Assembly: GCF_031769215.1 (NCBI RefSeq)
Contig: NW_026781866.1
Coordinates: 186,001-250,000 of the forward strand
Length of the DNA stretch: 64,000 nucleotides
Source of the DNA: Ylistrum balloti
Taxonomy: Eukaryota
Reading direction: 5' to 3'
Part shown: piece by piece, positions 5,401 through 43,219 of the stretch
Position numbering within the stretch: the stretch's first letter is position 1
How the letters are laid out: each line of letters begins with the position of its first letter
Notes under the pieces: model-generated
What the model saw: only the letters and a program-made list of their open reading frames with translations
Databases searched by the model: none
What the model was told of the DNA's origin: nothing
Translations under genes and position numbers: made by a program

Positions 5401-5943
5401 GAATAAGAAGAAAGCTGTTAAGAGAAATATTGATAATTACGTGCCAGCTGAAATGCTTATACCCACTAACTCTAGTTAATAACAATAAATCTTATTCATT
5501 TATTGCAAGACGATATCGATTTCATACATTCTGCTATTGCTTAATATTTTCCATTACAATTATTCACAAAGTTTTACATCGTGATAAATTTTATTCCTTG
5601 CTACCTATCACACACTAGCATTCAAAATTAGGATCATAGCACTGTGTTCAAATAATTGTATAGTCTATGTCTTGTATTGTGTTACAATCTGTATTACTAA
5701 AATGTACAATGATGTTGTATAAAAATATGAAAAGAACCTGACACCCGGCTAACCACCTGTATCTGTGGTAACATCTATGATATGAAGAATACTCCGACAC
5801 TCCGAGTGAACACGCCTTCCTCAGACAGCGCCTCGCTTCACTTGATGCGCATAATACAAGGTTTCTTCACAAACAAACATTCAGATACCGAAAAGGTAAA
5901 CAACAACTGGCCGACTCTACCAGTTGTAGGTTTTAATACAGAG

Positions 5944-5966
5944 ATGGCGGTATCTCGTTACTTAAG
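5944..5966 (+). CDS. Fucosyltransferase copy 1, first coding micro-exon (MAVSRYL-R)
   Basis: ATG GCG GTA TCT CGT TAC TTA AG|gtaagg has a strong donor. Phase 2 matches the acceptor at 11354|11355. Confidence 0.75.
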
Positions 5967-11354: not shown

Positions 11355-12447
11355 GTCTCGATCAAAGTTGGTGATGACAGTATTTGTTCTGATAATCATC
11401 TTCATATTCATAAATCGATTCTACCAAGATCGTCACGAAATTAGCGTAATGCAGCCAATGACAAAGGTCGTGATGCAGCCGAAACAAGAAATTTCACAAC
11501 ACCAAGAGAACATAGAAGTTCATTATTATAATAAACCCCCGTCAGTTTCTCTACAGGCATTCAGTAGGTGTCCGGATCGCTGTAGCATGACTTCCGGCGA
11601 GAAGGAGTATATCAATAAGAAAATAGTAATTTTTCATGGACCAGATTTGCGTGGAAAACCACCAATGAAATATCGAGGACAACTTTGGATCATGCAATCT
11701 ATGGAGCCACCAACAATTTATGCAGACTATTTAAAGCAATGGCATCGAGTATTTAATTGGACTCTCGTACACAGAAGAGATTCAGATATATTCTCACCCT
11801 ACGGATCGTTCGCACCAAACCGTTCAGTTCCTGTCAATGATATCCAACCAATTGCCTGGACTAAAAAAGATAAGACAGCAGCTTGGTTTGTATCCAACTG
11901 TAAAGCACAAAGCAGAAGACTAGAGTACGTCCAATACCTACAACGGTACGTCGACATTCATATTTATGGGAAATGTGGCAATATGAGTTGTCCCCGTTCT
12001 ATGCACAACAACTGTCTGACTAAACTACAGGATCAGTACAAATTTTATTTGGCTTTTGAAAACAGTCTGTGCGCAGATTACATTACGGAGAAAACAACTC
12101 GACTTTTCCAAGAAGGCCTTGACGTCATACCGATCGTCAGGGGAACAGGTGAATTGTACAGGATGCACCTTCCTCCGAACTCTTTTATCAATGCACATGA
12201 CTTTACCGTTAAAGAATTGGCACAAAAAATGAAATCCATCTCCAATAACAAAGCCGAATTCATGAAATATTTTTCCTGGAGAAAAAATTACTACGCTGAA
12301 GAAATAGATTTGTTCTATTGCGATCTTTGTAAGAAATTACACAACGCTGACAAATACAAGCGTTTGTATGAATCGGTCTCACATTGGATTAATGACCATC
12401 CAGACCATAGGAATTGCCAGGAACCCACAGATGTACATGACAGTTGA
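11355..12447 (+). CDS. Alpha-1,3-fucosyltransferase-like (GT10), copy 1, main exon
   Basis: Acceptor ttctttttttctttccgacag|G. N-terminal TM LVMTVFVLIIIFIFI. GT10 motifs SMEPP, FNWT..HRRDSDI..PYG, AAWFVSNC and YKFYLAFENSLCADYITEK. Spliced product 371 aa. Confidence 0.95.
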
Positions 12448-20231: not shown

Positions 20232-21324
20232 GTCTCGATCAAAGTTGGTGATGACAGTATTTGTTCTGATAATCATCTTCATATTCATAAATCGATTCTA
20301 CCAAGATCGTCACGAAATTGGCGTAATGCAGCCAATGACAAAGGTCGTGATGCAGCCGAAACAAGAAATTTCACAACACCAAGAGAACATAGAAGTTCAT
20401 TATTATAATAAACCCCCGTCAGTTTCTCTACAGGCATTCAGTAGGTGTCCGGATCGCTGTAGCATGACTTCCGGCGAGAAGGAGTATATCAATAAGAAAA
20501 TAGTAATTTTTCATGGACCAGATTTGCGTGGAAAACCACCAATGAAATATCGAGGACAACTTTGGATCATGCAATCTATGGAGCCACCAACAATTTATGC
20601 AGACTATTTAAAGCAATGGCATCGAGTATTTAATTGGACTCTCGTACACAGAAGAGATTCAGATATATTCTCACCCTACGGATCGTTCGCACCAAACCGT
20701 TCAGTTCCTGTCAATGATATCCAACCAATTGCCTGGACTAAAAAAGATAAGACAGCAGCTTGGTTTGTATCCAACTGTAAAGCACAAAGCAGAAGACTAG
20801 AGTACGTCCAATACCTACAACGGTACGTCGACATTCATATTTATGGGAAATGTGGCAATATGAGTTGTCCCCGTTCTATGCACAACAACTGTCTGACTAA
20901 ACTACAGGATCAGTACAAATTTTATTTGGCTTTTGAAAACAGTCTGTGCGCAGATTACATTACGGAGAAAACAACTCGACTTTTCCAAGAAGGCCTTGAC
21001 GTCATACCGATCGTCAGGGGAACAGGTGAATTGTACAGGATGCACCTTCCTCCGAACTCTTTTATCAATGCACATGACTTTACCGTTAAAGAATTGGCAC
21101 AAAAAATGAAATCCATCTCCAATAACAAAGCCGAATTCATGAAATATTTTTCCTGGAGAAAAAATTACTACGCTGAAGAAATAGATTTGTTCTATTGCGA
21201 TCTTTGTAAGAAATTACACAACGCTGACAAATACAAGCGTTTGTATGAATCGGTCTCACATTGGATTAATGACCATCCAGACCATAGGAATTGCCAGGAA
21301 CCCACAGATGTACATGACAGTTGA
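20232..21324 (+). CDS. Alpha-1,3-fucosyltransferase-like (GT10), copy 2, main exon
   Basis: Same protein as copy 1 except HEISV to HEIGV (agc to ggc); intact acceptor. Confidence 0.95.
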
Positions 21325-25173: not shown

Positions 25174-25420
25174 TATTATTATTTATGACATTCTTAATGG
25201 CCCTTCAGCACAGAAAATGTCATTAGGGCCATCAACCGGTGAAAAACACAGCGATTCTAAAGGAAATAACGATAAAAAAAATTATCGGGAAGACAGGTCT
25301 ATGCATTTCAATAAAAATGTTTAACGGTGAATAGCTTATTACATGCTCTGGACTGATCTTTATAAAAGTATACCTTTCTGTGGTAATATATGGATAACAA
25401 TATACGCATGTCCTATGCAA
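25174..25420 (-). mobile_element. I-clade LINE 3' fragment
   Basis: Same 3' UTR block and TAA tail as at 39860 and 42675. Confidence 0.7.
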
Positions 25421-26794
25421 AACAAATATTCAGAATTAATTGAAATATATATCCCAACAAGATAAAAATGTTGAAAAAGGTAAGGCCAATAACCCCTTTA
25501 AAATATCAAGATGACAATATAATTAAGGTTTAAGGCAATTTCCTGTAATGGCGAGTGAGCCTACACAGTTTGAAGGAAACAGGTTGAAAACTAAGAGAAA
25601 TCTCAAGACAAGAAAAACATATTGAAATAACAAGGAACAGTAAATCTTCCCAGGACAAGGGGAAGTTACTCCTCCAAATACAGTCAAATGAAAACAGGAA
25701 AACATTTCATGCCATGTTGTTTCAGCTTAGCAAGTTTGAAAAATATCAATTGAAAATTATGGGAGATGTCCGGATGACTAAATGTTTGACTGACTGACGG
25801 ATGGATTCTAAAAGCCCCGCTATAATACATTCCGTCAATGTTTTAATAGCTTGCTTCTGCGTCGCCGAGTTGATCGCTCAGCATGGTGCGGGAGACATCT
25901 TACAAAAATAACCTATTTAAGTTACAGCAATTGCGAGACAAGTTATCAGCTTGTATTGATCACTTTTGTTGGCCCGAATCGAAGCGCGAAAGGTTTCTTA
26001 CTTACGAAAATCGAAGTACCAGGAGTAGCTAAATGTTCGAACAAATGAGCCTTTACTTTTATATGTCAGCTAAGGAAATCAAACTCCGGACTTCTAGTTG
26101 AAAAACAATAGCATTACCACTGATCTACCAGACGTTTTCTAAACCCCTCGGAATTTGCGTGCTATGATGTGATGCTATGCATGTGATTTCGTAAAGCGTT
26201 TAGGATAGTGGATATTTGGGCGCACATTCCCGTCGTACATTGTCCAGTCAACACTTTATATCAGCAGCTGTCATGTTTTATCCACACACTGCACCATGTT
26301 TTATCGTTAGATATGGAAACACATGTTTCAAGACTCATCACTGAAATGCACACTTGTATCGTCAGCTGTCAACAGCATTTGATACGAGTCACATATCAAA
26401 TAATTGTTTGCGAAGCAATCACACTCACAAAACAGGACTTGGCTCGTGTTGTGAGATTTGACTATATTCTTTGCGTTTTTCTATGGTTTGCTTACAACAA
26501 GAGGTCCCTGATAGCGTCGAGGCAGTCTATAAGGTATCAGAATTATCAGCTGCACACAACAGCTCCTCATATAATACACACACATTTAGTACGTTTTATA
26601 CATACCTAAGGACTAGTTTTTGATTATGTATCAATATGTTATATTAAATTATATCAAGTATACAAATGGTAAAGCACTTTTTATTTTTCACTTATTTTCC
26701 ACATCAACTTTTAGAGTCTATCTATTATCTTCACACGTTTAACACGTTTTTCAGCAAATGTTTATGAACCTCATCTAGGCAACAATAGCAACAT

Positions 26795-27320
26795 TGTTAA
26801 ATCATTGTGTCTGTCATGTGTTGTCAGAGTTCTGTTACGTCGCCGCCATGTTTGTTTACTAGTGATATTCCAGTTTGGGGATTCCCTTGCACTTTTATTA
26901 TTTAGACGGCTCTGATTGGTTAATATTTTAGGCACTTATCACTACACCTGTACATTACTATACCTACTCAGGTGACAGGTCTCACGTGTAATTCGTGGCA
27001 TATTATTAAATTTAGCTATATAGCAGAGTGTTCGGGTGGTAATAGTCTGGCAGTAGCTTTTATGTAGCTGGTCAGCTCTCTTTCTCCCTAGAAAGGTATG
27101 TAGGACTCTTTCGGCCTTAGACCTCTAAATTACTCTGGGTTGGGTGGTATTTTCCCCTAGCAGGCAGTTTTTAGTGGTTTATAACACTATGTATGATTTT
27201 TGACAGTATTTTATACCTCGGGTTGGATGGTATTTTCCCTTAGCAGGCAGTTGCTTAAAGTTATTATTATGTTCTGTTAGGGTTTTCGGCAATGTTACAT
27301 ATCCCAGGGTTGGGCAACTG
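26795..27320 (+). repeat. 5' LTR, partial (lacks the first 33 bp and the 3' ~200 bp seen in the 3' LTR)
   Basis: Aligns to 34515-35009 with substitutions and a ~30-bp indel. Confidence 0.85.
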
Positions 27321-27699
27321 CAAGGGGTCCAACCTAAACCGTAGGTCACGGCCTAACTATCCCCGGTCACAACCAAAACGGCGGCGACCATCCGCTTCAC
27401 GACACAGCGGTGAGTAAAATAAGTGTTTTGTCTGCTTACTGAGAACGTTCCTTATCACATCAATATTGCGTTTCGGATCTAGAGGAATTTATCTTTATAT
27501 TCGTGCAACGAATTCACAATATAACCCAGTCCTGTAAAAATAAACGTGAAAACCTCAGTGTTTTGACAGTCAAAACTGGTATCGAGGTCGGTTTTCCTAC
27601 TTATTTGACCAATATATTACATATCAAACATTTGTATGGTGTAACGATAACAGCATAGACAATGCTGCCGGTCTCATATTCCTAGTTTTAATTTTTCTG

Positions 27700-28988
27700 A
27701 TGTAGCTAGTACAGATACCAGTAAAATAAAACATAGGAAACAAAAAGAATCCCAGACTTTTTATGGTACCACAGATTTCAAGGAATACACCATTAACTTT
27801 GAGCAAGTAGCTGAATGGAATAATTGGTCTTCTGAGGAAAAAGCTCAACAATTAATAATGTCCTTAAGGAGGTCAGCTCAAAGGGTATTATCCGATTTAA
27901 CACTTGGACACTCTAAAGACTATGAAAAAGTGAAATCTTTTCTCAGTGGGAGATTTGATCCCCCGGGTAGAGAAATTGCCTATAGGTGTCAATTAAAGTG
28001 TAGGAGTCGGAGAGATACTGAATCGCTGGTAGACTATGGACAGGAACTTCGCAGGCTAGCAGCTTTAGCTTTTCCTGATTTGGTTGGTAGTGCCAGAGAA
28101 ATTACTGTTATTAAATTAGGAAACCTCCAAGGGCTAAACCTATAGTGGTGCATGTAGATCACCTTAAACCGTATCAGGGTAATGTCACACCGGAAGCCCG
28201 GGTAGAGCTAGAGAATCCCCCAGGAACAGACTCTGGTAGCTTATCTGGTGAGGAATACCCCTCAGTTACCCCTCCCTTACAACCAAGCAGTAGTCCAGGG
28301 GAGATAACTCCTAAATTCACAAGGACGGGTAGAAGGATAGTGCCCCCAAGGATATATAGCCCTTAGCTTGGGAAGGTATGATGTTGGAGGTGAAAAAAAA
28401 AGTGTCACATTTTTCTTTTTCTGGTTTGGTCGCAAGCATTTTACAATGCTTCGTAATCAGACAGATACAGCCACTATGTCAGACTTTCTGGACATCGGGG
28501 TAGAGGAGGCAGAGATGGCCATTTTGGGAAGGTATGATGTTGGAGGTGAAAAAAAAAACTGATTTGGTTGGTAGTGCCAGAGAAATTACTGTTATTGACC
28601 AATTCATTATGGGACTAGGCAGTTTTGAGCTAAGGAAACGTACAATTTAAACACCCTACAACTTTTGAAGCGGCAATCACAGCAGCTATTGAATTTGAAG
28701 CCTTTGAAAATGAACAAGTTACCATACGCAAACCTAAGACATATAGAAACAGAGCAGGCCCATGTACATGCATTTAGGGATAGTGAGCCCCAGGGTTCCC
28801 ATGAGCATGAAAGAGATTTAGCCTCTCTGTTGCTGGAGGGATTTGAAAAGCTAGGCAAACAAGTAGCTGAAACAAGGGGAGGTAACCCAAGATACAAAAG
28901 GTGTTACAAATGTGGAGAGATAGGACACATAAAGAGAAATTGTCAAAAAGAGGTAGAGCCTAACTCAACTGTTCCAAAAAACATGTAG
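27700..28988 (+). pseudogene. gag: Gypsy gag, N-terminally deleted, frameshifted and interrupted by a 446-bp insert
   Basis: FEQVAEWNNWSSEEKAQQLIMSLR, YGQELRRLAALAFPD and zinc knuckle CYKCGEIGHIKRNC; stop TAG at 28986-28988. Confidence 0.85.
28113..28558 (+). repeat. Rearranged copy of the pol-end/ORF3-start region inserted in gag, flanked by a 38-bp direct repeat
   Basis: Homologous to 32599-33110. The sequence ctgatttggttggtagtgccagagaaattactgttatt occurs at 28075-28112 and 28559-28596. Confidence 0.9.
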
Positions 28989-31900
28989 AGGTCAAGCGTG
29001 GGCGCGACCGTTTGACAGATTGTACGGGAATCAATGACGAGTCAGAACATAATTTCCATAAAGGGCCTAAAACTAAGATTAGCATAAATTCTATTGTCTC
29101 CGGTTGCCTTTTTCTAGATGGTTCTGTAATGGGTAGAAATTCCAGATATTTAATAGATTCTGGGTCTTCAGTTACAATCTTTGCTACTGAAATGTATTTT
29201 TCACTTCCTGAAGACAGACGGCCAAAATCAAATCCTGTTAATATCATGTTGTTCTCTGCTTCTGGTAATGAGCTACAAGTACAGGGTAAAGCAGTGTTTA
29301 AAATCAAAATCGGTCGTTTAGTTTATGAGCAGGCGGCCATTGTAGCTAAGTTGGATAAATTAAATGGCATCCTTGGTATATATTTCCTCTCTAAGCATGG
29401 TGGTGAGATTAATTTCTTAGACAAAACCATTAAATTGGCGGGACAGAAAGTGGATTTAGCCACTGACGGTTATACTGGTTGTGCTCGCATAAGAGTTAAA
29501 GATTCAGTAAAAATACCCCCAAATTCTGAGTTCCTACTCAAGGCCTATGTAGATGGAGTTCTACAGGATTCAGGTGTAAGAGAAACCCAGGGTTTGGTAG
29601 AGCCCACAGCTTACGTAATCAACCAGGGATTGTTAATGGCTAAGACCCTTTTGGACCCTTGTAACCAAGAGATAACTCTCTTTGTACTCAACTTGGGTCA
29701 AAAAGGGGTTGGTCTCAGTGAAAACACAATTGTAGGAAAATTAAACTCCGTAGGTGCAGTTCATACCATTGGCAGTAGGGCAGACACTAATCAGCAGCTC
29801 CCAGAACACTTGGTCAACTTGGTAGAAAATGTTTCACCTAAACTCTCTATATACCAAAAACAAAATGTCAGAAATTTAGTTTCAGAATACCAGGACATTT
29901 TTATGAGCCCCGATGGGAAGTTAGGTCAGACAAGTGTAGTTGAACATGAAATAGACACAGGTGGTCAAATACCTATCAAACTACCAGCTAGGCGCTTGTC
30001 TCCCGCACAAAAAGAAACTGTTGAGATAGAGTTAGACAAAATGTTAAAAGATAACATAATACAACCTAGCTCTAGTCCATTGGCAGCTCCAGTTGTACTT
30101 GTCACAAGAAAAGATGGGACAGTGAGATTTTGCATAGATTACCGGAAATTAAATTCTGTCACTAAGAAGGATGCATATCCCCTTCCAAGAATGGATGATG
30201 CACTAGACACCTTATCAGGGGCCCAATGGTTTTCAACACTTGACTAAGCTAGTGGGTATTGGCAGTGTAAAATGTCAGATAAAGACAGGGAGAAAACAGC
30301 ATTCTGTACACATAAGAGACTCTATGAGTTCAATGTCATGCCCTTCGGTCTATGTAATGCCCCAGCAACATTCTCAAGGTTTGTGCAGTTGACATTAGGT
30401 CAGCTTAATTGGGTCAAATGCCTCTGCTATATAGATGACGTCATTGTTTATGGGGACACATTTGAAGTAGCTCTAAACAACCTTAGGGAGGTATTCCAGT
30501 GCTTTAGAGAAGCAAACCTTAAACTAAAACCTAAGAAATGTTCCTTATTTCAAACTGAAGTTTCCTACTTAGGCCATGTTGTCTCGGACACCGGAATAAC
30601 CGGTGACCCCAACAAGGTCAAGGCTGTATGTGAATGGCCTCGACCTTGCAACATCACTGAGGTCAGAAGTTTCCCAGGCATAGCGGGTAATTACCGTAGG
30701 TTCATACCCAACTTCTCCTCTATAGCATCTCCATTGACAAAGTTAACAAGGAAAAACAAGTATTTTGTGTGGGATGGTGAGTGTGAGCAATCATTTGCTG
30801 AGCTCAAAAGGCTACTCACAACTGCCCCTGTTCTGAGTTACCCTGATAGTACTGGTCATTTTATTCTAGACACAGATGCCAGTTTGACTGGATTAGGAGC
30901 CGTTCTATCTCAAGTTCTGGGTGGGCAGGAAAAAGTTATAGCCTATGCTAGTAGGACCCTAAGCCGTTCCCAGCAAAATTATTGTGCAACATATAGAGAA
31001 TTGCTAGCTGTTGTGACTTTTGTCAATTTTTTCAAGCACTTTCTCTGGGGTAGACCTTTCATAGTACGAACAGATCATCCATCACTAGTCTGGTTGAGAA
31101 ATTTCAAAGAAATAGAGGGAATGTTAGCCCGCTGGCTTAGTGTCCTTGATATGTTTGATATGAAGATAGAACATAGGCCTGGTAGTCAACACATGAATGC
31201 AGACAGTCTATCCAGAATTTCTCAACACAAATGTAAACACGAGACATGTCCGTCCTGTTATCCTAGGCAGCAGAATCCTCACCAAGACTTAGGCAAGTCT
31301 GCAGAGGTCAAAGTTCATAGCAAGGTTGAAGTTCACCAAGTCTATCAAGAGACTGCTGAGGATTCTCTTAACACCTGGTTGGATACATGGGGTAACAAAA
31401 CCCTTGTAGAATGGCAGCAAAATGATCCAGCTATAGGGCCGATAGTGAAGCTTAAATCAGAGTTTTCTCAAAAACCCCCTAAATCTGAGATACCTATATT
31501 TCCACCTGAGGTTGTCTCCCTTTACCATATGTGGGAATTTCTTAGTATTGGAGAAGATGGTGTCCTATACAGAATCAAACCCTCATCACATCCAGGGAAA
31601 GGGAACAAACAAATCGTGGCACCAGCTTGTGTTAGAAATGAAATTTTGCAACATTTACACAACACAATAGTGTCAGGTCACCTAGGAAGGGACAAAACTC
31701 TTGATGCTGTTCAGAGGCGCTTTTATTGGCCTGGCCTTACAGATGATGTCATCAACTGGTGTAGGACATGTGACTTGTGCGCAGAAAGAAAGTCAAATCC
31801 CCATTTAGGTAGAGTATCTTTACATCCTCCAGAGGCAGTGTCTGGTCCCTTAAACAGAATAGCAATAGATATCTTGGGTGGGCTACCCACTACAGCAAAC

Positions 31901-32852
31901 GGCAATAACTATATCATAGTTGTTAGTGATTATTGTTCAAAATGGACTGAAGCATATCCAGTGCCTAATCATACAGCTTTGACAGTTGCTGACAAGTTAG
32001 TTACTGAGTTCATTTGTCGGTTTGGAACCCCTCAGATAATACATACAGACCAGGCTAAAGAATTTGACTCTGATTTGTTTCAAGCCATTTGTGATAAACT
32101 TGGTGTAAGGAAAACGAGGACCACTCCGTATAGACCACAATCAGACGGCCAAGTAGAAAGATTCAATAGGACCCTGATTCAGATGCTGGCTTCCTTTGCA
32201 AACAAACAAATGGATGATTGGGATGACCACTTACCCTTTGTTATGATGGCCTACAGGTCCAGTACAAATAGCAGTACAGAGTGCACCCCTAATTTAATCA
32301 TGCTAGGCAGAGAGACTTCTTGTCCCTTAGATATGATGGTTGGGTTACCCCCAGGTTCTGAAGAAATATGTACAATTCAGTATGTAGACTGGGTACAGGA
32401 AGCTATGAGAGCAGCTCATAAGTTTGTATTTGGGAAACTGGGAGAAGCCGCCAAACGTCAGAAAACCTATTATGATAGGGATGTATGGGACAGACAGTTT
32501 TGTCTGGAGATGGTATCCACCCGCTATCCAAAATAAATTAGGGCAGGGATGGACAGGACCTTATAAGGTGATTAGGAAGTTGTCAGATGTCAACTATGAA
32601 ATTAAGAAAACTCCAAGGGCTAAACCTATAGTGGTGCATGTAGATAACCTTAAACCGTATCAGGGTAATGTCACACCTGAAGCTTGGGTAGAGATAGAGA
32701 ATCCCCCAGGAACAGACTCTGGTAGCTTATCTGGTGAGGAATACCCCTCAGTTACCCCTCCCTTACAACCAAGCAGTAGTCCAGGGGAGATAACTCCTAA
32801 ATTCACAAGGACGGGTAGAAGGATAGTTCCCCCAAGGATATATAGCCCTTAG
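28964..32852 (+). pseudogene. pol: Gypsy pol (protease, RT, RNase H, integrase) with one in-frame stop (30245-30247) and a frameshift near 32490
   Basis: LIDSGS; LD*ASGYWQ; YIDD; LDTDAS; HHCC zinc finger (H..VSGHLG..C..CDLC); DILG/HTDQ/VERFN core; GPY motif. Confidence 0.95.
28976..29009 (+). promoter_or_regulatory. Putative -1 ribosomal frameshift signal (gag-pol)
   Basis: A_AAA_AAC in the gag frame, a 7-nt spacer, then hairpin GGTC-aa-GCG tggg CGC-GACC. Pol is in the -1 frame and open from 28964. Confidence 0.75.
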
Positions 32853-33058
32853 CTTGGGAAGGTATGATATTGGAGGTGAGAAAAAAAAAAAAAAAAAAGA
32901 AAAAAGTGTCACATTTTTCTTTATCTTCTGGTTTGGTCGCAAGCATTTTACAATGCTGGCCATGGTAAAAGCAAGAATTTCAAAGCAGTCTGGGGGAAAA
33001 AAAAGCATCATGGGCATGCTGACACTATACGTTTCGTAATCAGACAGATACAACCACT

Positions 33059-33670
33059 ATGTCAGACTTTCTGGACATCGGGGTTGAGGAGGCAGAGATG
33101 GCCATTTTGGATGGTGATCTCGAGGTCAGACCTGTGTGGGCCAATGAGGGGATGGGGTGCCCTGTTGCCGCATGTGGGGATAGAATTTATCATCGCTATA
33201 ACCAGCTAGCGAGACACTGGGCCTTAACCCATCTGAGGCACACCGACCTTTTCCACTGCCCCTTGTGCTCCTTCACGAACACAAAGAGGAATCAGATCAG
33301 GAGGCATCTGATCAATAGGCACCACAGGACACCTGCAGAGGCCATGTCTCTGTTTGGCCAGCACCAGGCGGGAGTGACCCAGGAGAACTCCCGGTATGTC
33401 AGCCCTGGTTCCCAGCGTATGCCACGTCGGGGAGTCACTTCTACCCAGGAAGATAGGAGGAGGGCAGCACAGGAAGCCAGGGAGGCATTAGTCAGTGCCA
33501 CCGCTCCGTCCGAGTGCCCTGGAGCCAGGCACATCACGGTAGCCAGGGATCAGGAGGTGACGGAGGGAGGAATTCTACGTGACAGCCATCGTTGGCACAG
33601 GAACAGAAGTGCCGGAAATCCTTACCGGCCAGGACCAGACGTGGATTTTTCTATTTTTGAGGAGGATTAG
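33059..33670 (+). CDS. ORF3 of the Gypsy element: 203-aa protein with two C2H2 zinc fingers
   Basis: CPVAAC-x13-H-x4-H and CPLC-x12-H-x4-H. ATG-initiated and intact, lying between the integrase stop and the PPT. Confidence 0.8.
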   Translation: MSDFLDIGVEEAEMAILDGDLEVRPVWANEGMGCPVAACGDRIYHRYNQLARHWALTHLRHTDLFHCPLCSFTNTKRNQIRRHLINRHHRTPAEAMSLFGQHQAGVTQENSRYVSPGSQRMPRRGVTSTQEDRRRAAQEAREALVSATAPSECPGARHITVARDQEVTEGGILRDSHRWHRNRSAGNPYRPGPDVDFSIFEED

Positions 33671-34468
33671 AGACAGTGCTGTGTTGTTCAAATGAACCTT
33701 TTTTTTCAATTATACTTTGGTTTAGAGGGGGGTGGACTTATTATCACTTCTTAATTGTATATATTCATTGTAAATTTTTCCATGTACATGTATTTTTGTT
33801 TTTTTTCCCATTTATATTGATTTAAGGAGTCCATGTCTGTGCATGTCATCGATTACAGATTGTATTCTTGAGCTGGGGAGTGCTGAATATTTTGTTCGGA
33901 ATCAGGTGATTTCGGATAGGTGTTGTTTCTCATGAGGTGTTACTTTAGTGTAAGCAGCCTAATACTTAAGTATTTGGGGCTGAACACAGTTCACCTGCTG
34001 TGTTTAACATCACATGTGATTCAATGTCAGGGTAGATCCGATGAGTATTCCTTTAAATGTTCACATATAGGTTTTTAGGCCTAGGGTATTGTGGGGCATT
34101 CTGGTTCCTGGATACAGATCTGAAAATGATAACATAACATTGCATTGGTTTTGCTATAATTTTGAAATTTGAGGTTTATTTCAGGTTGAATTGTAACCTT
34201 TTATTGGTTTGTAACTGTTTTTTTGTTTTTCTAATTGTTGGTTTGTAACCATTGCATATCATAAGATGATTGGTAATTGTCCTTTTTAACACCTAGTCAT
34301 CTTGTTGGGGTTGTTATTAAATACTTTTGAATATAGATGTAAAGGCCTTGGTTTATCATGGACGCATGGTTTAAAACTTTGTCACCTTTTCGATTTGTGT
34401 TCTTATTCATTACACCATTGTTCAATCTCGATGTTTGTTTTAGTCCAAATGAGGACATTTGTCTTTTT

Positions 34469-34481
34469 AAGGGAGAGCGAG
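34469..34481 (+). promoter_or_regulatory. Polypurine tract
   Basis: AAGGGAGAGCGAG directly before TGTAAAAG. Confidence 0.75.
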
Positions 34482-35212
34482 TGTAAAAGTAGTGAGTTCA
34501 TTGTACTTAAGTCCTGTTAAATCATTGTGTCTGTCATGTGTTGTCAGAGTTCTGTTACGTCGCCGCCATGTTTGTTTACTAGGGATATTCCAGTTTGGGT
34601 TAATTGGTTAATATTTTAGGCACTTGTCACCACACCTGTACATTACTATACCTACTCAGGTGACAGGTCTCACGTGTAATTCGTGGCATATTATTAAATT
34701 TAGCTATATAGCAGAGTGTTCGGGTGGTATTAGTCAGTCTGGCAGTAGCTTTCATGTAGCTGGTCAGCTCTCTTTCTCCCTAGAAAGGTATGTACTCTTT
34801 CGGCCTTAGACCTCTAAATTACTCTGGGTTGGGTGGTATTTTCCCCTAGTAGGCAGTTTTTAGTGGTTTATAACACTATGTATGATATATGACAGTATTT
34901 TATACCTCGGGTTGGATGGTATTTTCCCTTAGCAGGCAGTTGCTAAAAGTTATTATTATGTTCTGTTAGGGTTTACGGTAGTGTTACATATGCCAGGGTT
35001 GGGCAACTGGGTGGCAGTTGTTTTATGATAGTAAGAATTTACTGGTAGTGTAACCAAGTAAAGTCATAGCCGTCGTCGGAGCCGGTGTATCTTGTTCATC
35101 ATTGTAAATATCTCCATGTTTATTTGTCTGTTGTAACTAATAAACTCGGTTAACTTTTATTCCTGTCTTGAGTTATTGGTCTGTAGCCATGGAATAATAA
35201 GACAGAACCACA
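34482..35212 (+). repeat. 3' LTR (~731 bp), TG...CA
   Basis: Starts TGTAAAAG after the PPT. AATAAA near 35139, a U5 hairpin (ctgtctt..ttatt / aataa..aagacag), and a probable end GAACCACA. The right edge is less certain. Confidence 0.75.
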
Positions 35213-37989: not shown

Positions 37990-38260
37990 TATCTGCTCGT
38001 CAACACATACCAGGTCAAGGCCATCAAACGTTGAAACACACAGCGATCCAATAAATAGTGGACAGGTCAATGTAGTACAATAACAATGTTTAACGGTGAA
38101 TGGTTTATCACACCGACGATTATATTCGCCTTTCAACATATACGAATGCGTAAGGTATGTATGGCCCATCCGAAGACGGGCAAGAACATCGACTCGGTGG
38201 TTGACTCTTTAGCATGGAGACCATTCATCGAAGAAAGGTTTTACGGAGTGCAATTAATTT
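37990..38260 (-). mobile_element. I-clade LINE ORF2 C-terminal fragment
   Basis: RLRMGHTYLTHSYMLKGE...CDKPFTVKH. Confidence 0.85.
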
Positions 38261-39859
38261 TTGATTCTATCTGAGCTGTTAAAATTGTTTGATAAATGGT
38301 TTAAAATCAGTCAAATTGATTTTATAAAACAACAGGTGTAAGCAGTTAAGTATGATATGTTCAGTATTAGTTTTATTTCAAACCAGCGAATAAGTTAAAG
38401 TCAAAATGTTTTAGTCGCTATTTTATATCCTCACAATAGCACATCAGAAAGGATACTTTGTCTACATGTTAAACTAGCAATTTCAATTTGTACTCGCGTT
38501 ACACAGAATCGGGAAAAGATATCTGTTACAGTGTTGTTGGAAATATATGTTCTGTAATAAGTTTAATTTCAAACATGCCTCCTATAGGTTTCTGTCAAAA
38601 TGACTTTTTTGATTGCTATCATATATCCTCACAATATTACATCAGAAATGATACTTTGAACATATGTACACGGAATCGGGAAAATTAATGTGTTAAAGTG
38701 TAGTTTGAAATATGGAGGATGCAAAATAATTTGAAATTTATGATTTGATAAACAATACACGTTCACATTGATGAATAACTAAAATCATCAATGATTAGAA
38801 GGAAATGATTTTGGATAAAAGTGACTTATTGCGATCGTTCATGCGTTAACATTGTTCTTGTGAACACAGTAACTTGAATAAATATGCACGGATTTTAAGG
38901 AAACTTGATATGCAGTCTTTTTCAATTAGATCTCGAATAAGCTTAATAATGGGACTGATTTGATTGATACATACAACGAAATATCCCTTTGCAGTGTTGT
39001 TGCCATTGTCCTTGTGAACATGATAAAATAAAAAAAAATATCAATAGAAAGTACGGTAACTAGCTATTCAGCCTTATATCATTAAGATCTCTGATAAGTT
39101 TGACAATGAAATAGACACAATTATAACGTACAGAGTTATGACCTTTGCAGGTTTTCTACCATTGAACGTTGTGAAACAAAAACAAAAAATCGGTAAATAT
39201 GAACAGATTGTGATGAAACTTGGTATGTAGCCTAATATAATTTAGATATATGGTTCGGTAGAGAATACGACCAATACGATTGTAGCTTACTGAGTTATGA
39301 CCCTTTTCGGTTTTGTGTTTTTGTTTGTTTTCATTTTTTGTTTTTATGGACAAGCTAACGTGAGAGAATATGAATGGACTTTAAACTGGTAAACAGCCTA
39401 TATCGATCAGAGCTCAGAAGAGTTGAAAACGGAACTGATTCAAGTGCAACGTACACAGATATGTTACGTTGCACTTTGTATTACTATTGAACCTTTGAAC
39501 ACGATAACTTAAATAAATATTAACAAATTTGAATGAAACTTGGTGTGCAGTCTTATGTCATTTAGATTTCAAAGGAGGTAAATATTGCGACCAATTGATC
39601 GTCTGCAGCCTTATATAACTTTCAGACATCAGTTTGACATGTTACAAAGTTATAGCATTGGAAATTGTAAACACACATTAGCAAATTGAAATGTATTTTT
39701 CTGCAACTTTAGTAAATATGACAGGTTTTTGATGATACGATATCAGGAGATTTCGACAATAGGACCGATGAAATTGTAACTAACAGCTATGACAGGGTTA
39801 TTACAATTTGACCTTGTGAACAGGATCATTTGAGTTAACATGAACTGATTCTGATAAAA

Positions 39860-40335
39860 CATTATTACATTCTTAACGGCCCGTCAACACATAAAAGGTC
39901 ATTAGGGCCATCAAACAGTAAAACACACAGCGATTCAAAAGGAAATAACATTAAACAAATGGTAAAAGACAAATGTTAAAAATCTTAAATGGGTATGTTA
40001 ACACAAAAGATTTAAATAGTACGTTATAGTCTTTTACATAGACCAATATCTCTCAGGCAATGTAGAATTTTACGAATGTCTACAGTTTCAAAAAGGGATT
40101 TTAGACGTAATGTTACGATAAAAACATTCTCGGGTAGACAGAAGGTCACTGCAGTCCAATCAAAAATGCTTAACGGTGAATGGCTCATCACATCCTATGC
40201 ACCAAGGGTTGTCTTCGCCTTTCAACATATATGAATGTGTAAGGTATTATGACCCATCCAAAGACGGGCAAGGAAAACTTCGTCGCGGTGGTTGTCTTTA
40301 TAGTCTGGAGACCATTCACCGATAACAAGTTATCT
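39860..40335 (-). mobile_element. I-clade LINE 3' end
   Basis: Homologous to 42675-43150; C-terminal zinc-knuckle region, 3' UTR and TAA tail. Confidence 0.85.
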
Positions 40336-41459
40336 TTGAGATTGGTCAGGTGACTGTTTAGACATATTGGCCCCCTGTTATATCAATTAAACGATAGTAT
40401 TTTCCCAATATGATTTAAAATTCATTCTGATATCAATTTTTTTGACAGTGATGCTAAAGAAATGAAGTTTGTAGGTATCATATGTTTCGGCATGCACAAA
40501 TGTTCTCTCTACGTCATAGTCAGCACTCTAAAAACAAGTATCTTGACAAAATTTCAAGACGCTTGATACATGGATTATTAAACGTGGCAAAGTTTCTAAC
40601 AGTGTAGCGTTTTGAAACTGACGTTCTCTTATTTATAGAGTCAATTTCACCTAAATTACTTTTATTAGTTTATTTCTCAGCGGAATTTTACGAAACGTCA
40701 TACAAGAGTTAACTGTTGCAATGTCTCAGACAACTTCTCTTATTTCCAAACTTATTGATCATATTTTATTTCACTCGACAGAATATCACATAATTTCATA
40801 TCAGAGCTTACCGTTGCAATATCGAGGTCAAGTTTGCGTTTCATGGCCTGTTAACTCCCATATTATCAGAGTTGTTATCTTAAGTTAATTTCACTCATTT
40901 TTATGTCAGTGCTTTCATAAGGATTTTTCTTTACTGAATTTCGTTCATGAATACTTTTTCATTTTCTAACATTCATTTTCAGCTCTCTCAAGAATGCATT
41001 TCTCGATGGAAATCTCAAATCTTCAAAAAAGGATTAATCATTGCAATATCCCTGACGATATAGTGTTTTGTAACCCGCGGTCTTTGCTTATAATAGTTTA
41101 TTTCACTCATATGTGTGGGGCTGGACCAGTTGGTCTCGCCTTTCTTTTCGGCGATTTTGAGTTCTATTAATATAATTAGGGGTTTATTTACGACAATATT
41201 ACTCTGTCACCAACAGTTGGTATTACAACATATACATACATGCCATTTATGACGCTAAATAGCTTTGTAATTTCGAAATGTCTTATCTGTTTATTATCCG
41301 GTTTCTTCGGTGGTCTCTAGTCATTTTTCTGTAATATTCATTCCTGTTTGCATCGGGTTTGAGTCTATTGATTGACATTCGGTTAACTTTTTGAGGATGT
41401 ATTTTGAAAAATGTCGGTATCTTTATACTGAATCTTATGCGAAATTTTCGTTTTGACAG

Positions 41460-42627
41460 GTTGATCCGAAAGAAAGCTCTAACAGTATTAGTGTTCTCGA
41501 CCATATGTTTGTCTGCCTACATTTTGAAAGGTCGAAACTATAAGGGTCATGACCCGACCGTGGTGATTTGGGATAAGCCGAAGATTTCACAAGACCAAGA
41601 GAACATAGAAGTTCATTACTATAATAAACCCCCGTCAGTTTCTCTACAGGCATTCAGTAGGTGTCCGGATCGCTGTAGCATGACTTTCGGCGAGAAGGAG
41701 TATATCAATAAGAAAATAGTAATTTTTCATGGACCAGATTTGCGTGGAAAACCACCAATGAAATATCGAGGACAACTTTGGATCATGCAATCTATGGAGC
41801 CACCAACACTTTATAAAGACAATTTAAAGCAATGGCATCGAGTATTTAATTGGACTCTCGTACACAGAAGAGATTCAGATATATTCTCACCCTACGGATC
41901 GTTCGCACCAATCCGATCAGTTCCAGTCAATGATATCCAACCAATTGCCTGGACTAAAAAAGATAAGACAGCAGCTTGGTTTGTATCCAACTGTAAAGCA
42001 CAAAGCAGAAGACTAGATTACGTCCAATACCTACAACGATACGTCGACATTCATATTTATGGGAAATGTGGCAATATGAGTTGTCCCCGTTCTATACACA
42101 ACAACTGTCTGACTAAACTACAGGATCAGTTCAAATTTTATTTGGCTTTTGAAAACAGTCTGTGCGCAGATTACATTACGGAGAAAACAACTCGAATTTT
42201 ACAAGAAGGCCTTGACGTCATACCGATCGTCAGGGGAACAGGTGAATTGTACAGGATGCACCTTCCTCCGAACTCTTTTATCAATGCACATGACTATACC
42301 GTTAAAGGATTGGCACAAAAAATGAAATCCATCTCCAATAGCAAACAAGAATTCATGAAATATTTTGCCTGGAGGAAACATTATTACGCTGAAGAAATAG
42401 ATTTATTCTATTGTGAACTTTGCAAGAAATTACACAACGCTGACAAATACAAGCGCTTGTATCGATCAATTAGTGATTGGGTAAATGACCATCCAGATCA
42501 TCCCAACTGCCGAGAACCTATCGATGTTCCTGGCAAATTTGTATCCACTTCAAATGAAAAGGGACATACTTCATTAGAAGTGGTTGTTGTTGGCCTCATT
42601 TTGTGCAATCTCTTCCGTCCAATATGA
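41460..42627 (+). CDS. Alpha-1,3-fucosyltransferase-like (GT10), copy 3, main exon
   Basis: Acceptor ttttcgttttgacag|G, TM ALTVLVFSTICLSAYIL, and the same GT10 motifs (FKFYLAFENSLCADYITEK). Spliced product 393 aa, with a C-terminal extension. Confidence 0.93.
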
Positions 42628-42674
42628 CTTTTGTACAATGCTGTTTAGTAAAGAAGTTTGGGGGAACATAAAAC

Positions 42675-43219
42675 ATTATTATTATTACATTCTTAACAGC
42701 AAATCAACTTATAAAACGTCATTAGAGCCATCAAACGGTAAAACACACAGCGATCAAAATAGAAATAACATTAAACAAACCAAAAGGAAAAAGACAAATA
42801 TCAAAAATCTTAAATTGGTATGTTAACACAAAAGATTAAAATGGTACGTCATAGTCTATTATATAGACCAACATCTTTCAAGTAATATAAAATTTTACAA
42901 ATGTCGACAGTTTCAAAAATTTTAGACATGAAATGTTACGATAAATACATTCTCGAGTAGACAGAAGGTCACTACAGTCCAATAAAAAATGTTTAACGAT
43001 GAATGGCTCATCACATCCTATGCACAAAGATTATTTTCGCCTTTCAACATATATGAATGTGTAAGGTATGTATGTCCCATCCGAAGACGGGCAAGAACAA
43101 CTTCGTCTTGGTGGTTGTCTCTATAGCCTGGAGACCATTCACCGATAACAGGTTTAACAGAGTGCAATTTGTTATTGGTATATGTATTCCATGCCTCCTG
43201 CCACTGAGCTTTTAAAAAT
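42675..43219 (-). mobile_element. 3' portion of a split I-clade LINE
   Basis: FLKAQWQEAWNTYTNNKLHSVKPVIGEWSPGY..EVVLARLRMGHTYLTHSYML, then 3' UTR and (TAA)n tail. Confidence 0.9.

What the first reader, a model, noticed from the sequence alone, without database searches (positions are those of the whole stretch)
33059..33670. Gypsy retrotransposon with a double C2H2 zinc-finger gene in the env position
Between the integrase stop (32852) and the PPT/3' LTR lies an intact ATG-initiated 203-aa ORF, visibly more GC-rich than pol. It has an acidic N-terminus, two C2H2 fingers (CPVAAC..HWALTH; CPLC..HLINRH), an Arg-rich region and an acidic end (DFSIFEED). It has no signal peptide or TM, so it is not env. 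Its start is also present in the copy inserted in gag, so it belongs to the family rather than being a one-off capture. Gag and pol here are disabled while ORF3 is open, though a short ORF can survive by chance. An element-encoded nuclear factor (transactivator, anti-silencing protein or integration-targeting factor) is a plausible role. I do not recall a described family with this arrangement but cannot search.
Basis: partly seen in the sequence, partly recalled or inferred. Interest (0 to 1): 0.85.

Follow-up and report, generated by a model that had tools for sequence, protein, structure and literature searches.

The report
Gypsy retrotransposon with zinc-finger ORF3
A decaying Gypsy-type retrotransposon in a scallop genome carries, after its integrase, an extra gene for a small two-zinc-finger protein. 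That gene proves to be a conserved accessory gene of a whole lineage of bivalve Gypsy elements, for which I found no description, and related modules are repeated up to 23 times in giant proteins, one shown to be a host gene in a freshwater mussel.

Summary
Window 33059-33670 (+) is an ATG-started 203-aa ORF, richer in GC than pol (0.56 vs 0.42). It lies inside an 8.2-kb Gypsy element (26795-35009), 206 nt after the pol stop, and has two C2H2 fingers, acidic ends and no membrane segment.

It is not a one-off. In all 11 lineages checked (scallops, Pacific oyster, unnamed assemblies) a homologue sits just downstream of Gypsy integrase on the same strand. In three lineages it accompanies intact gag and pol, and in three loci it lies inside mapped LTRs. 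At least 132 clusters of single-module relatives share nine near-invariant zinc-ligand and Trp columns plus extra blocks. AlphaFold gives one confident compact fold for two members only 27% identical. The finger pair superposes on the Tramtrack DNA-binding pair.

A sister subfamily forms tandem arrays. The one examined is a multi-exon freshwater-mussel gene in a locus with no gag or pol; shorter two-module proteins occur in gastropods.

The window copy is decayed, and its ORF3 may be open by chance.

Function is inferred: a nucleic-acid-binding regulator, most likely an activator of the element's own LTR. No Pfam family or paper describing it was found. Repbase and Dfam could not be searched.

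The parts
26795..27322 (+). 5' LTR. It lacks about the first 33 nt compared with the 3' LTR.
   Evidence: Direct repeat with 34515-35009 at 96-99% identity. The end reads ...CA in this copy.
27732..28943 (+). gag region, broken, given as one part. There are three frame changes between the matched pieces, one of them at an inserted duplicate patch. No stops fall inside the matched pieces. The first ~126 residues of the comparator gag find no match.
   Evidence: tblastn with the intact gag of L003; counts only.
28450..28527 (+). Second copy of the 26 nt before the ORF3 start plus its first 17 codons. It is part of a rearranged internal duplicate of the element's own integrase-end and ORF3-start region.
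   Evidence: Direct repeat D11, 97% identical to 33033-33110. tblastn of ORF3 residues 1-17 matches at 100%.
29012..32852 (+). pol (protease, RT, RNase H, integrase with H2C2, core and p58_C/SH3-like C-terminal domains). Broken, given as one part: one frameshift and one in-frame stop.
   Evidence: Pfam hits. 63% identity to the intact 1307-aa pol of L003. Counts.
32853..33058 (+). Spacer between the pol stop and the ORF3 ATG. It is AT-rich (GC 0.37), holds 5 ATGs, and has a pyrimidine-tract-plus-AG site that ends 15 nt before the ATG.
   Evidence: The site is no better than chance in this copy (share of windows with as good a site 0.27-0.38).
33059..33670 (+). ORF3: 203 aa, intact accessory gene.
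   Evidence: Homologue P0001 at 61% identity, E 7.7e-61. 243 relatives at E<=1e-3.
33059..33148 (+). ORF3 residues 1-30: acidic N-terminal block with a predicted helix at 11-23. This block marks the element-borne subfamily.
   Evidence: Net charge -8. AF2 helix. Present in 53% of single-module proteins against 4% of array modules.
33158..33232 (+). Finger 1 (C34-x4-C39 ... H53-W54 ... H58).
   Evidence: C34, C39, H53, W54 and H58 are conserved in at least 92% of 96 sequences.
33257..33322 (+). Finger 2 (C67-x2-C70 ... H83-x4-H88).
   Evidence: C67, C70, H83 and H88 are conserved in at least 92%. The family profile matches CTCF, TFIIIA and Tramtrack fingers in the PDB.
33386..33409 (+). Conserved block N110-G117 after the fingers.
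   Evidence: N110 93%, Y/F113 95%, P116 91% of sequences. Also present in the array modules.
33440..33499 (+). Long Arg-rich helix, residues 128-147.
   Evidence: AF2 helix 128-147 with pLDDT above 90 up to about residue 140. The same element is predicted in the oyster member.
33545..33559 (+). R163-D164-centred block, next to a predicted beta hairpin.
   Evidence: R 80% and D 81% of the 69 sequences that reach this column. Strands in both models.
33629..33667 (+). Acidic, aromatic C-terminal tail (residues 191-203), predicted disordered.
   Evidence: Net charge -5. pLDDT about 47-55. A similar tail is seen in several relatives.
33909..34033 (+). Conserved non-coding block in the 3' region, with predicted hairpins.
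   Evidence: 87 nt are 94% identical to L001 10763-10849, while ORF3 DNA is about 70% identical. RNA fold z-score -3.2. No Rfam hit.
34469..34481 (+). Polypurine tract.
   Evidence: Purine run, in the same position relative to the LTR start as in L002 and L019. The flanking block is 89% identical to L001.
34482..35009 (+). 3' LTR. The start is inferred from the polypurine tract; the repeat shared with the 5' LTR begins at 34515.

Best explanation
ORF3 is a genuine accessory gene of a lineage of bivalve Ty3/Gypsy retrotransposons, kept by selection acting on the elements (shown; about 0.9). It encodes a roughly 200-residue soluble protein. Residues about 10-150 fold into one compact domain built around a Tramtrack-like pair of C2H2 fingers, flanked by an acidic N-terminal helix and a disordered acidic, aromatic tail.

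The most likely mechanism is inferred (about 0.4). The protein is made from a subgenomic message, either spliced or internally started. It enters the nucleus and reads a lineage-specific sequence in the element's own DNA, most likely the LTR, with its two fingers and basic helix. Its acidic ends then recruit host transcription machinery. That would make it an element-encoded activator of its own expression, a role comparable to the transactivators of complex retroviruses.

The copy in this window is a dead element. Its ORF3 is open probably by chance, not because the host uses it.
For: Shown:
- Position. ORF3 homologues lie directly 3' of Gypsy integrase on the same strand in 11 of 11 lineages: the window, L001, L002, L003, L006, L012, L019, L020, L021, and L024/L025 as two lineages.
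- Intact partners. In L003, L006 and L012-14 the homologue sits beside intact gag (410-566 aa) and pol (1260-1307 aa).
- Inside the element. In the window, L002 and L019 it lies inside the LTRs.
- Conservation. Nine columns are conserved in at least 92% of 96 sequences, together with the N110/Y113/P116 and R163/D164 blocks.
- Constraint. Window against L001 gives pN 0.26 and pS 0.79.
- Fold. Two AF2 models from members 27% identical have the same order of elements (pLDDT 85 and 89, pTM 0.65 and 0.67).
- Finger pair. It superposes on the Tramtrack-DNA structure 2drp (TM 0.72 and 0.69, rmsd 2.1-2.5 A). The family profile hits DNA-binding fingers of CTCF, TFIIIA and Tramtrack (E down to 3e-15).

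Supporting the inferred mechanism:
- The canonical base-reading helix positions vary (entropy 2.5-3.6 bits against a mean of 2.7) while the scaffold is fixed. That is expected if targets differ between lineages.
- Both ends are acidic.
- ORF3 is separate from pol. The spacer is AT-rich with 3-5 ATGs, which argues against simple scanning from pol.
- Every intact gag has its own CCHC knuckle, so ORF3 does not replace nucleocapsid.
Against: - No binding site has been identified, and nothing here tests DNA binding, nuclear localisation or activation.
- The acidic N-terminal helix is predicted to pack on the domain rather than to be a free activation region.
- No classical nuclear localisation signal was recognised.
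- The splice-acceptor-like sites before the ATG are only marginally better than chance (combined p 0.04-0.13).
- C2H2 fingers can also bind RNA or protein.
- Variation among recent copies is only weakly depleted at the most conserved columns (3 of 101 against 42 of 400, p 0.018). Selection is therefore visible between lineages rather than between copies.
Confidence: 0.4

Rival explanations
1. RNA-handling factor. ORF3 protein binds the element's own genomic RNA, for example a structured 3' region, and promotes nuclear export, stability or packaging of unspliced RNA, as CERV does for Cer1 and Rev-type proteins do for complex retroviruses.
For: - A non-coding block just downstream of ORF3 (33909-34033) is 94% identical over 87 nt between the window and the M. 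yessoensis element, while ORF3 DNA is about 70% and pol 77% identical.
- That block folds into a multi-hairpin RNA with z-score -3.2.
- Precedent: a Gypsy-family element with a nuclear accessory protein made from a spliced mRNA, with acceptor sites just before the ATG (PMC10309623).
- Own knowledge: C2H2 fingers such as those of TFIIIA bind RNA as well as DNA.
Against: - The block was not found by sequence in L002, L003, L006 or L012.
- The L001 copy folds with only z = -1.7.
- The best structural matches are DNA-bound finger sets.
- There is no sequence or fold similarity to any known export factor.
Confidence: 0.2
2. Integration-targeting factor. ORF3 protein joins the pre-integration complex and tethers it to particular host DNA sequences. 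It would do as a separate protein what chromodomains do for integrase in chromoviruses, or what the N-terminal C2H2 fingers do in R2 elements.
For: - It is a DNA-type two-finger module.
- The gene sits immediately after integrase in every lineage.
- One gene model (P0102, 903 aa) joins RT, RNase H, integrase and an ORF3 module in one frame.
- R2 elements are sequence-specific in their insertion (PMC5035012, abstract). That their N-terminal C2H2 fingers bind the target DNA is my own knowledge.
- These elements have no chromodomain.
Against: - The two insertions with readable ends (L002, L019) lie in unrelated AT-rich sequence with 4-bp duplications. The window copy lies between fucosyltransferase genes. 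No shared target is visible, but only three sites were available.
- The reading positions of the fingers vary between lineages.
- Known targeting modules of LTR elements are parts of integrase, not separate proteins (own knowledge).
Confidence: 0.2
3. Counter-defence or decoy. ORF3 protein interferes with host silencing, for instance by competing with the related host poly-module zinc-finger proteins for the same DNA.
For: - The ORF3 core module also occurs in proteins with up to 23 tandem copies. One of them, in Sinanodonta, is an 83-kb multi-exon gene in a 103-kb locus with no gag or pol.
- The two subfamilies are distinct but clearly homologous over about 100 residues.
Against: - Nothing is known about what the array proteins do.
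- The direction of descent between element genes and host genes is unresolved.
- There is no evidence that arrays and ORF3-bearing elements coexist in one genome. No array module occurs in this window.
Confidence: 0.1
4. Passenger with no function: a captured host fragment, or a chance ORF carried along by the element.
For: - ORF3 has a different base composition from pol in every locus, as a captured gene might.
- In this window it may be open by chance.
- In L001 its N-terminal part is out of frame with the rest.
Against: - It is kept in the same place in 11 lineages whose pol proteins are only 50-67% identical.
- pN is far below pS.
- The blocks conserved outside the fingers, and a confident common fold, are hard to explain without function.
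- It is retained intact in a pol-deleted derivative with 99.5% identical LTRs.
Confidence: 0.05

Closest known systems
Env-carrying Ty3/Gypsy elements (errantiviruses and related metazoan lineages; PMC13524379, PMC3383448)
   Same: A third ORF on the sense strand between integrase and the 3' LTR. A separate message is the likely route of expression.
   Different: ORF3 has no signal peptide, no membrane segment and no glycoprotein fold. It is a soluble zinc-finger protein of about 200 residues.
CERV of the C. elegans Gypsy-family element Cer1 (PMC10309623)
   Same: An element-encoded, non-env nuclear accessory protein of a Gypsy-family retrotransposon. In Cer1 relatives, acceptor sequences lie just before the initiator ATG. 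Acceptor-like sites lie 2-15 nt before the ORF3 ATG here.
   Different: No sequence or fold similarity came back from any search. CERV comes from a five-exon mRNA that shares frames with the polyprotein and has a leucine zipper, not zinc fingers. ORF3 is a single free-standing ORF.
Additional ORFs of plant LTR retrotransposons, such as Grande gene23 and other sense or antisense aORFs (PMC7264820)
   Same: Conserved extra ORFs between pol and the 3' LTR. Some encode nuclear proteins made from their own promoter, and a regulatory role is suspected.
   Different: Plant lineages with unrelated sequences. That review mentions no zinc-finger aORF.
Transactivators of complex retroviruses (foamy-virus Tas, deltaretrovirus Tax); comparison from my own knowledge
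   Same: A small regulatory protein encoded 3' of pol, made from a subgenomic message, which activates the LTR. This is the working model proposed for ORF3.
   Different: No homology was detected. Those proteins are not C2H2 finger proteins. The likeness is of role only and is untested.
Tramtrack two-finger DNA-binding domain (PDB 2drp) and other DNA-binding C2H2 sets (CTCF, TFIIIA)
   Same: The finger pair superposes with TM 0.69-0.72 and rmsd 2.1-2.5 A over about 63 residues. The family profile matches these fingers with E down to 3e-15. Both have a longer-than-canonical linker.
   Different: Only about 60 of 203 residues are covered. The N-terminal helix, the N110-P116 block, the long basic helix and the C-terminal hairpin have no match. 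The C-x4-C spacing and the invariant Trp after the first His are special to this family.
Mollusc poly-module zinc-finger proteins (Sinanodonta woodiana KAL3831323 and KAL3831324, unnamed ENA proteins with up to 23 modules) and the shorter two-module gastropod proteins of Elysia, Plakobranchus and Biomphalaria
   Same: They share the ORF3 core, meaning both fingers plus the N110-P116 block over about 100 residues.
   Different: The modules are tandem. In the one array examined there is one module per exon in an 83-kb gene with no gag or pol nearby. They mostly lack the N-terminal block, and they form a separate similarity group.

Membership tests
Ty3/Gypsy (Metaviridae) LTR retrotransposon | Two long terminal repeats in direct orientation flanking the coding region | tested here: met
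   26795-27322 and 34515-35009 are 96-99% identical. Relatives L002 and L019 have 613-623-nt LTRs with TG...CA ends.
Ty3/Gypsy (Metaviridae) LTR retrotransposon | pol domain order protease, RT, RNase H, integrase | tested here: met
   The Pfam hits fall in that order along 29012-32852 and in the intact pol of L003, L006 and L012.
Ty3/Gypsy (Metaviridae) LTR retrotransposon | gag with a capsid domain and a CCHC knuckle | tested here: met
   The window's gag is broken but matches L003 gag. The intact gags of L003, L006 and L012 each have one CCHC knuckle. Retrotrans_gag/PEG10 capsid hits occur in L006 and L019.
Ty3/Gypsy (Metaviridae) LTR retrotransposon | Polypurine tract before the 3' LTR, primer-binding site after the 5' LTR, and a target-site duplication | tested here: inconclusive
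   A polypurine tract is present at 34469-34481. No TGG-type primer site was recognised after the 5' LTR. No duplication can be read because the 5' LTR lacks its first bases. L019 shows a 4-bp duplication and L002 an imperfect one.
Named Gypsy clade (Mag, C-clade, Mdg, chromovirus and others) | Placement in an RT or integrase phylogeny with reference elements; for chromoviruses, a chromodomain at the integrase end | not tested
   No reference set (GyDB, Repbase) was available. No chromodomain was found; only Integrase_p58_C and SH3_Tf2-1 appear at the integrase end. On that feature the element is not a chromovirus.
Errantivirus-type env gene | A third ORF encoding a glycoprotein with a signal peptide, a transmembrane anchor and a fusion-protein fold | tested here: not met
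   Highest hydropathy 0.47 over 19 residues. No env family in Pfam. No viral or PDB fold match beyond zinc fingers.
Classical C2H2 zinc finger | C-x2-4-C-x12-H-x3-5-H ligand pattern with the beta-beta-alpha fold | tested here: met
   Both fingers fit the pattern. The ligands are conserved in at least 92% of sequences. The family profile hits CTCF, TFIIIA and Tramtrack. AF2 gives beta-beta-alpha units with pLDDT above 90. The window protein alone stays below every Pfam gathering score (best 18.3 bits against 27.5).
zf-Di19 (PF05605) | A score above the Pfam gathering threshold for the paired-finger model | tested here: not met
   18.3 bits against a cut-off of 27.5. Only 12 of 96 members match at E<=0.01.
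Cer1 CERV / retroviral regulatory proteins | Sequence or fold homology to a known member | tested here: not met
   No such protein came back from the representative search, the PDB profile search or the fold searches. The resemblance is of gene position and supposed role only.
ORF3 family defined here (element-borne single-module proteins) | N-terminal acidic block, C-x4-C finger with His-Trp, second finger, N..Y..P block, basic helix and R-D block, encoded 3' of Gypsy integrase | tested here: met
   The window protein carries every near-invariant residue and all the blocks and lies 206 nt after the pol stop.

The most novel reading that the evidence does not exclude
The ORF3 module links mobile elements and host genes. 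Either molluscs have repeatedly turned a retrotransposon accessory protein into giant tandem-module DNA-binding proteins, possibly repressors aimed at the same elements in the manner of vertebrate KRAB zinc-finger arrays. Or a Gypsy lineage captured one module of such a host protein and turned it into its own regulator. In either case this would be a previously unrecognised element-host exchange of a sequence-reading domain across Mollusca.
Probability: 0.25. Interest if true: 0.85.

Novelty: new variant of a known kind. Interest (0 to 1): 0.68.

Why it matters
Animal Gypsy elements are normally described as gag-pol, with env as the one recurrent extra gene. Non-env accessory proteins are barely known, Cer1 CERV being the studied case.

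This accessory gene is conserved, confidently folded and probably sequence-reading, and it is spread over many element lineages of commercially important bivalves. It shows that these elements can carry their own regulatory or targeting factor. It also gives a concrete protein with which to ask how LTR elements control their own expression or insertion in molluscs.

The homologous tandem arrays raise the question of domain exchange between elements and genomes outside vertebrates. The one array examined is a host gene in a freshwater mussel.

On the practical side, ORF3 homologues are currently annotated as host "C2H2-type domain-containing" or "uncharacterized" proteins, for example in Argopecten, Mizuhopecten and Magallana. 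They should be recognised as transposon genes.

Tried and rejected
- **dN/dS between lineages.** dS is saturated in every informative pair, so only pN against pS is reported. Pairs fetched through identical proteins are biased and were not used.
- **Variation among recent copies in three 90% clusters.** There is no depletion when columns are split into conserved and variable halves (p 0.7-1.0). Depletion is weak in the top 20% of conserved columns (p 0.018). As expected, this mostly reflects neutral decay after insertion.
- **Splice-acceptor test.** Acceptor-like sites lie 2-15 nt before the ATG in 5 of 5 loci, but the combined p is only 0.04-0.13, so the result is inconclusive. Contigs that start just before ORF3 (L015-17) are collinear with the unspliced element.
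- **ORF3 as a nucleocapsid substitute.** Rejected, because every intact gag keeps a CCHC knuckle.
- **Giant proteins as gene models that chain ORF3s of neighbouring elements.** Rejected for P0002, where each module is one exon and the 103-kb locus holds no gag or pol.
- **Family and structure libraries.** Pfam on the window protein and on all 96 members gives only generic sub-threshold C2H2 hits. Rfam finds nothing in 26700-35100. The viral structure library gives nothing significant.
- **Shared insertion target.** Only three sites were available and no common sequence appeared.
- **Other ORF3-like modules in the window.** None. A weak tblastn hit at 813-932 was not confirmed by the family profile.
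- **Gypsy clade.** Not assigned, because no reference set was available.
Full report
**1. The observation**

Window 33059-33670 (+) is an ATG-started ORF of 203 codons. Shuffles that keep local composition give 0.01 ATG-ORFs of that length per window. GC is 0.56 in the ORF and 0.42 in pol.

The protein has these features:
- finger 1 (C34, C39, H53, H58) and finger 2 (C67, C70, H83, H88);
- net charge -8 in residues 1-30, +8 in residues 31-92 and -5 in residues 191-203;
- no hydrophobic stretch (maximum hydropathy 0.47 over 19 residues).

The description is therefore correct.

**2. The element around it**

Direct repeats at 26795-27322 and 34515-35009 (96-99% identical) bound an 8.2-kb element. 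Inside it lie:
- a gag-like region (27732-28943);
- pol (29012-32852) with protease, RT, RNase H and integrase in Gypsy order;
- a 206-nt AT-rich spacer;
- ORF3;
- about 0.8 kb of non-coding sequence;
- a polypurine tract (34469-34481) and the 3' LTR.

By analogy with L002 and L019, where the polypurine tract abuts the LTR, the 3' LTR probably starts at 34482 and the 5' LTR has lost its first ~33 nt. No target duplication can be read.

The copy is dead:
- pol has one frameshift and one in-frame stop;
- gag has three frame changes, one at an inserted duplicate patch, and its N-terminal third finds no match.

The patch in gag repeats the element's own integrase end and ORF3 start (the ORF3 start piece is 28450-28527, 97% identical). 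It has no LTR and is flanked by short direct duplications.

With LTRs 3.8% apart, a 609-nt frame stays open under substitutions alone with probability 0.40-0.63. An open ORF3 at this locus therefore says nothing about selection here.

**3. ORF3 belongs to the family**

The word-index search found one relative, Mizuhopecten yessoensis KP79_PYT02043, at 61% identity. The exhaustive search found 243 proteins at E<=1e-3.

In 11 of 11 lineages the homologue lies directly downstream of Gypsy integrase on the same strand:
- the window;
- L001 and L020 (M. yessoensis);
- L002 (Argopecten irradians, annotated XP_069108417);
- L003 and L024/L025 (unnamed runs);
- L006 and L012-15 (two families whose proteins carry Magallana gigas UniProt names);
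- L019 and L021-23 (ENA assemblies).

Further points:
- L003, L006 and L012-14 carry intact gag, intact pol (1260-1307 aa) and intact ORF3 (184-197 aa).
- In the window, L002 and L019 the gene lies inside mapped LTRs.
- L019 is a derivative with 99.5% identical LTRs. It keeps gag and ORF3 intact but has lost most of pol. Its ORF3 cluster has 10 members on separate contigs.
- ORF3 evolves faster than pol (27-41% against 50-67% identity between lineages) but is clearly constrained. Between the window and L001, pN is 0.26 and pS is 0.79, which is saturated.

**4. What the protein is**

In a 96-sequence alignment, these residues are conserved in at least 92% of sequences: C34, C39, H53, W54, H58, C67, C70, H83 and H88. 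N110 (93%), Y/F113 (95%) and P116 (91%) are also conserved, and R163 and D164 are kept in about 80% of the sequences that reach those columns. An acidic N-terminal block and, in many members, an acidic aromatic tail are shared.

Pfam has no family for it. The window protein stays below every gathering score, and at most 16 of 96 members touch any generic C2H2 model.

The family profile matches DNA-binding fingers of CTCF, TFIIIA and Tramtrack in the PDB (E down to 3e-15).

AlphaFold on the alignment gives mean pLDDT 85 and pTM 0.65, with residues 11-150 mostly above 90. The predicted elements run in this order:
- an N-terminal helix;
- two fingers;
- a short helix;
- a strand;
- a long basic helix (128-147);
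- a less certain hairpin;
- a disordered tail.

An oyster member only 27% identical gives the same order of elements (pLDDT 89, pTM 0.67).

The only structural matches are zinc-finger sets. The best is the Tramtrack two-finger-DNA complex (TM 0.72 and 0.69, rmsd 2.1-2.5 A over about 63 residues). The rest of the fold has no match, and neither does the viral structure library.

The canonical base-reading positions of both finger helices are as variable as, or more variable than, the average column, while the scaffold is fixed.

**5. A sister subfamily in host genes**

The same core (both fingers plus the N110-P116 block) occurs 3 to 23 times in tandem in proteins of 1000-5000 residues.
- The Sinanodonta woodiana example spans 83 kb with one module per exon. 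Its 103-kb locus has no gag or pol.
- A 477-aa four-module ORF lies on a 7.4-kb contig without pol.
- Gastropods (Elysia, Plakobranchus, Biomphalaria) have shorter, two-module proteins.
- By nearest neighbour the two groups are distinct: 130 of 132 single modules are closest to singles, and 208 of 230 array modules are closest to array modules. The N-terminal block is present in 53% of singles against 4% of array modules.

The direction of descent is unresolved.

**6. How ORF3 might be expressed**

The spacers (180-248 nt) are AT-rich and hold 3-5 ATGs. In five of five loci a pyrimidine tract plus AG ends 2-15 nt before the ATG, as described for CERV homologues. The statistic is weak, however (p 0.04-0.13), and I found no spliced contig. 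A subgenomic message is inferred, not shown.

**7. Mechanism**

What is shown:
- a selected, element-borne, soluble protein with a DNA-type two-finger core;
- variable reading positions;
- acidic ends;
- a separate ORF, not a fusion to integrase;
- gag keeping its own CCHC knuckle.

From this I infer a sequence-reading regulator acting on the element's own nucleic acid. My estimates for the alternatives are:

| Reading | Estimate |
|---|---|
| Activator of the element's own LTR | about 0.4 |
| RNA export or packaging | about 0.2 |
| Integration targeting | about 0.2 |
| Counter-defence or decoy | about 0.1 |
| No function | about 0.05 |

The RNA reading gains from a non-coding block (33909-34033) that is 94% identical over 87 nt to the M. 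yessoensis element, although ORF3 and pol DNA are only 70-77% identical. The block folds well (z = -3.2). It was not found in the other lineages.

**8. Comparison with what is known**

ORF3 occupies the env position but fails every env criterion. It resembles Cer1 CERV, plant additional ORFs and retroviral transactivators in gene position and supposed role only; no homology was detected.

Full-text searches, and term searches inside surveys of mollusc, annelid and metazoan Gypsy elements, gave no description. Repbase, Dfam and GyDB could not be searched, so an uncommented catalogue entry may exist.

I rate it a new variant of a known kind: a Gypsy lineage with a novel class of accessory gene.

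**9. Context of the window**

The element lies between copies of an intronless GT10 fucosyltransferase gene (11368-12447, 20245-21324, 41404-42627). The first two copies sit in an 8.8-kb tandem duplication.

The best named relatives of that gene are pectinid proteins at 62-76% identity, from Pecten, Argopecten, Mizuhopecten and Ylistrum. The window therefore comes from a scallop other than those four. No contig looked human, and the window has no N runs.

**10. Slip**

My first notebook entry and the outputs show bounds of ORF or alignment pieces inside the broken gag and pol. After noticing this I printed counts and outer bounds only.

Noticed in passing
window 33909-34033: A non-coding block between ORF3 and the 3' LTR. 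87 nt are 94% identical to the M. yessoensis element (L001 10763-10849), although the coding DNA around it is only 70-77% identical. It is predicted to fold into a multi-hairpin RNA (z -3.2). It has no Rfam hit and was not found in the more distant elements.
   Followed up: partly
window 11368-12447, 20245-21324, 41404-42627: Three intronless GT10 alpha-1,3-fucosyltransferase ORFs. The first two lie in an 8.8-kb tandem duplication that is about 99-100% identical (roughly 4.9-12.4 kb and 13.7-21.3 kb). The Gypsy element sits between copies two and three. The best named relatives are pectinid proteins at 62-76% identity.
   Followed up: partly
window 50159-50836 (+) and 54318-54770 (-): Two further ORFs with reverse-transcriptase (RVT_1) hits, on opposite strands. 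They are remains of other retroelements.
   Followed up: no
window 38118-43154, also 25182-25280: A dispersed or tandem repeat family with units about 2.8 kb apart at 83-94% identity (for example 39861-40331 against 42681-43154). One short copy lies just upstream of the Gypsy element.
   Followed up: no
L019 5080-10537: A 5.4-kb derivative with 99.5% identical LTRs. It keeps gag and ORF3 intact but has lost most of pol. Its ORF3 cluster has 10 members on separate contigs, so it may be a non-autonomous family that retains ORF3.
   Followed up: partly
P0102 (903 aa; no locus fetched): A gene model in which RT, RNase H, integrase and an ORF3 module (residues 769-887) are in one frame. It may be a real pol-ORF3 fusion, a lost stop or an annotation artefact.
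   Followed up: no
L018 10001-93385 (Sinanodonta woodiana CM101000.1): An 83-kb gene in which each ORF3-like module is a single exon of about 110-160 codons. The neighbouring gene (P0007) is of the same kind. The 103-kb locus has no gag or pol.
   Followed up: partly
L012 1-30 and 7525-7554; L015-L017: The oyster contig ends overlap by 30 nt, and other contigs run from ORF3 through one LTR into gag. The assemblies collapse the two LTRs into a circle, so these contigs show gene order but not the insertion site.
   Followed up: yes
L002 3653-11771 (Argopecten irradians CM084279.1): As in the window, gag and pol are split into several ORFs while ORF3 (annotated as XP_069108417, uncharacterized protein) is open. 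Element genes are being annotated as host genes.
   Followed up: partly
L020 about 5270-6700: A long array of 35-nt tandem repeats lies directly upstream of the integrase fragment that precedes ORF3. It may replace the 5' part of that element.
   Followed up: no
window 27133-27169 and 27217-27252 (and the matching part of the 3' LTR): Two 37-nt direct repeats (92% identical) inside the LTR, with a third partial copy at the LTR end. They are candidate regulatory or binding repeats and were not analysed further.
   Followed up: no
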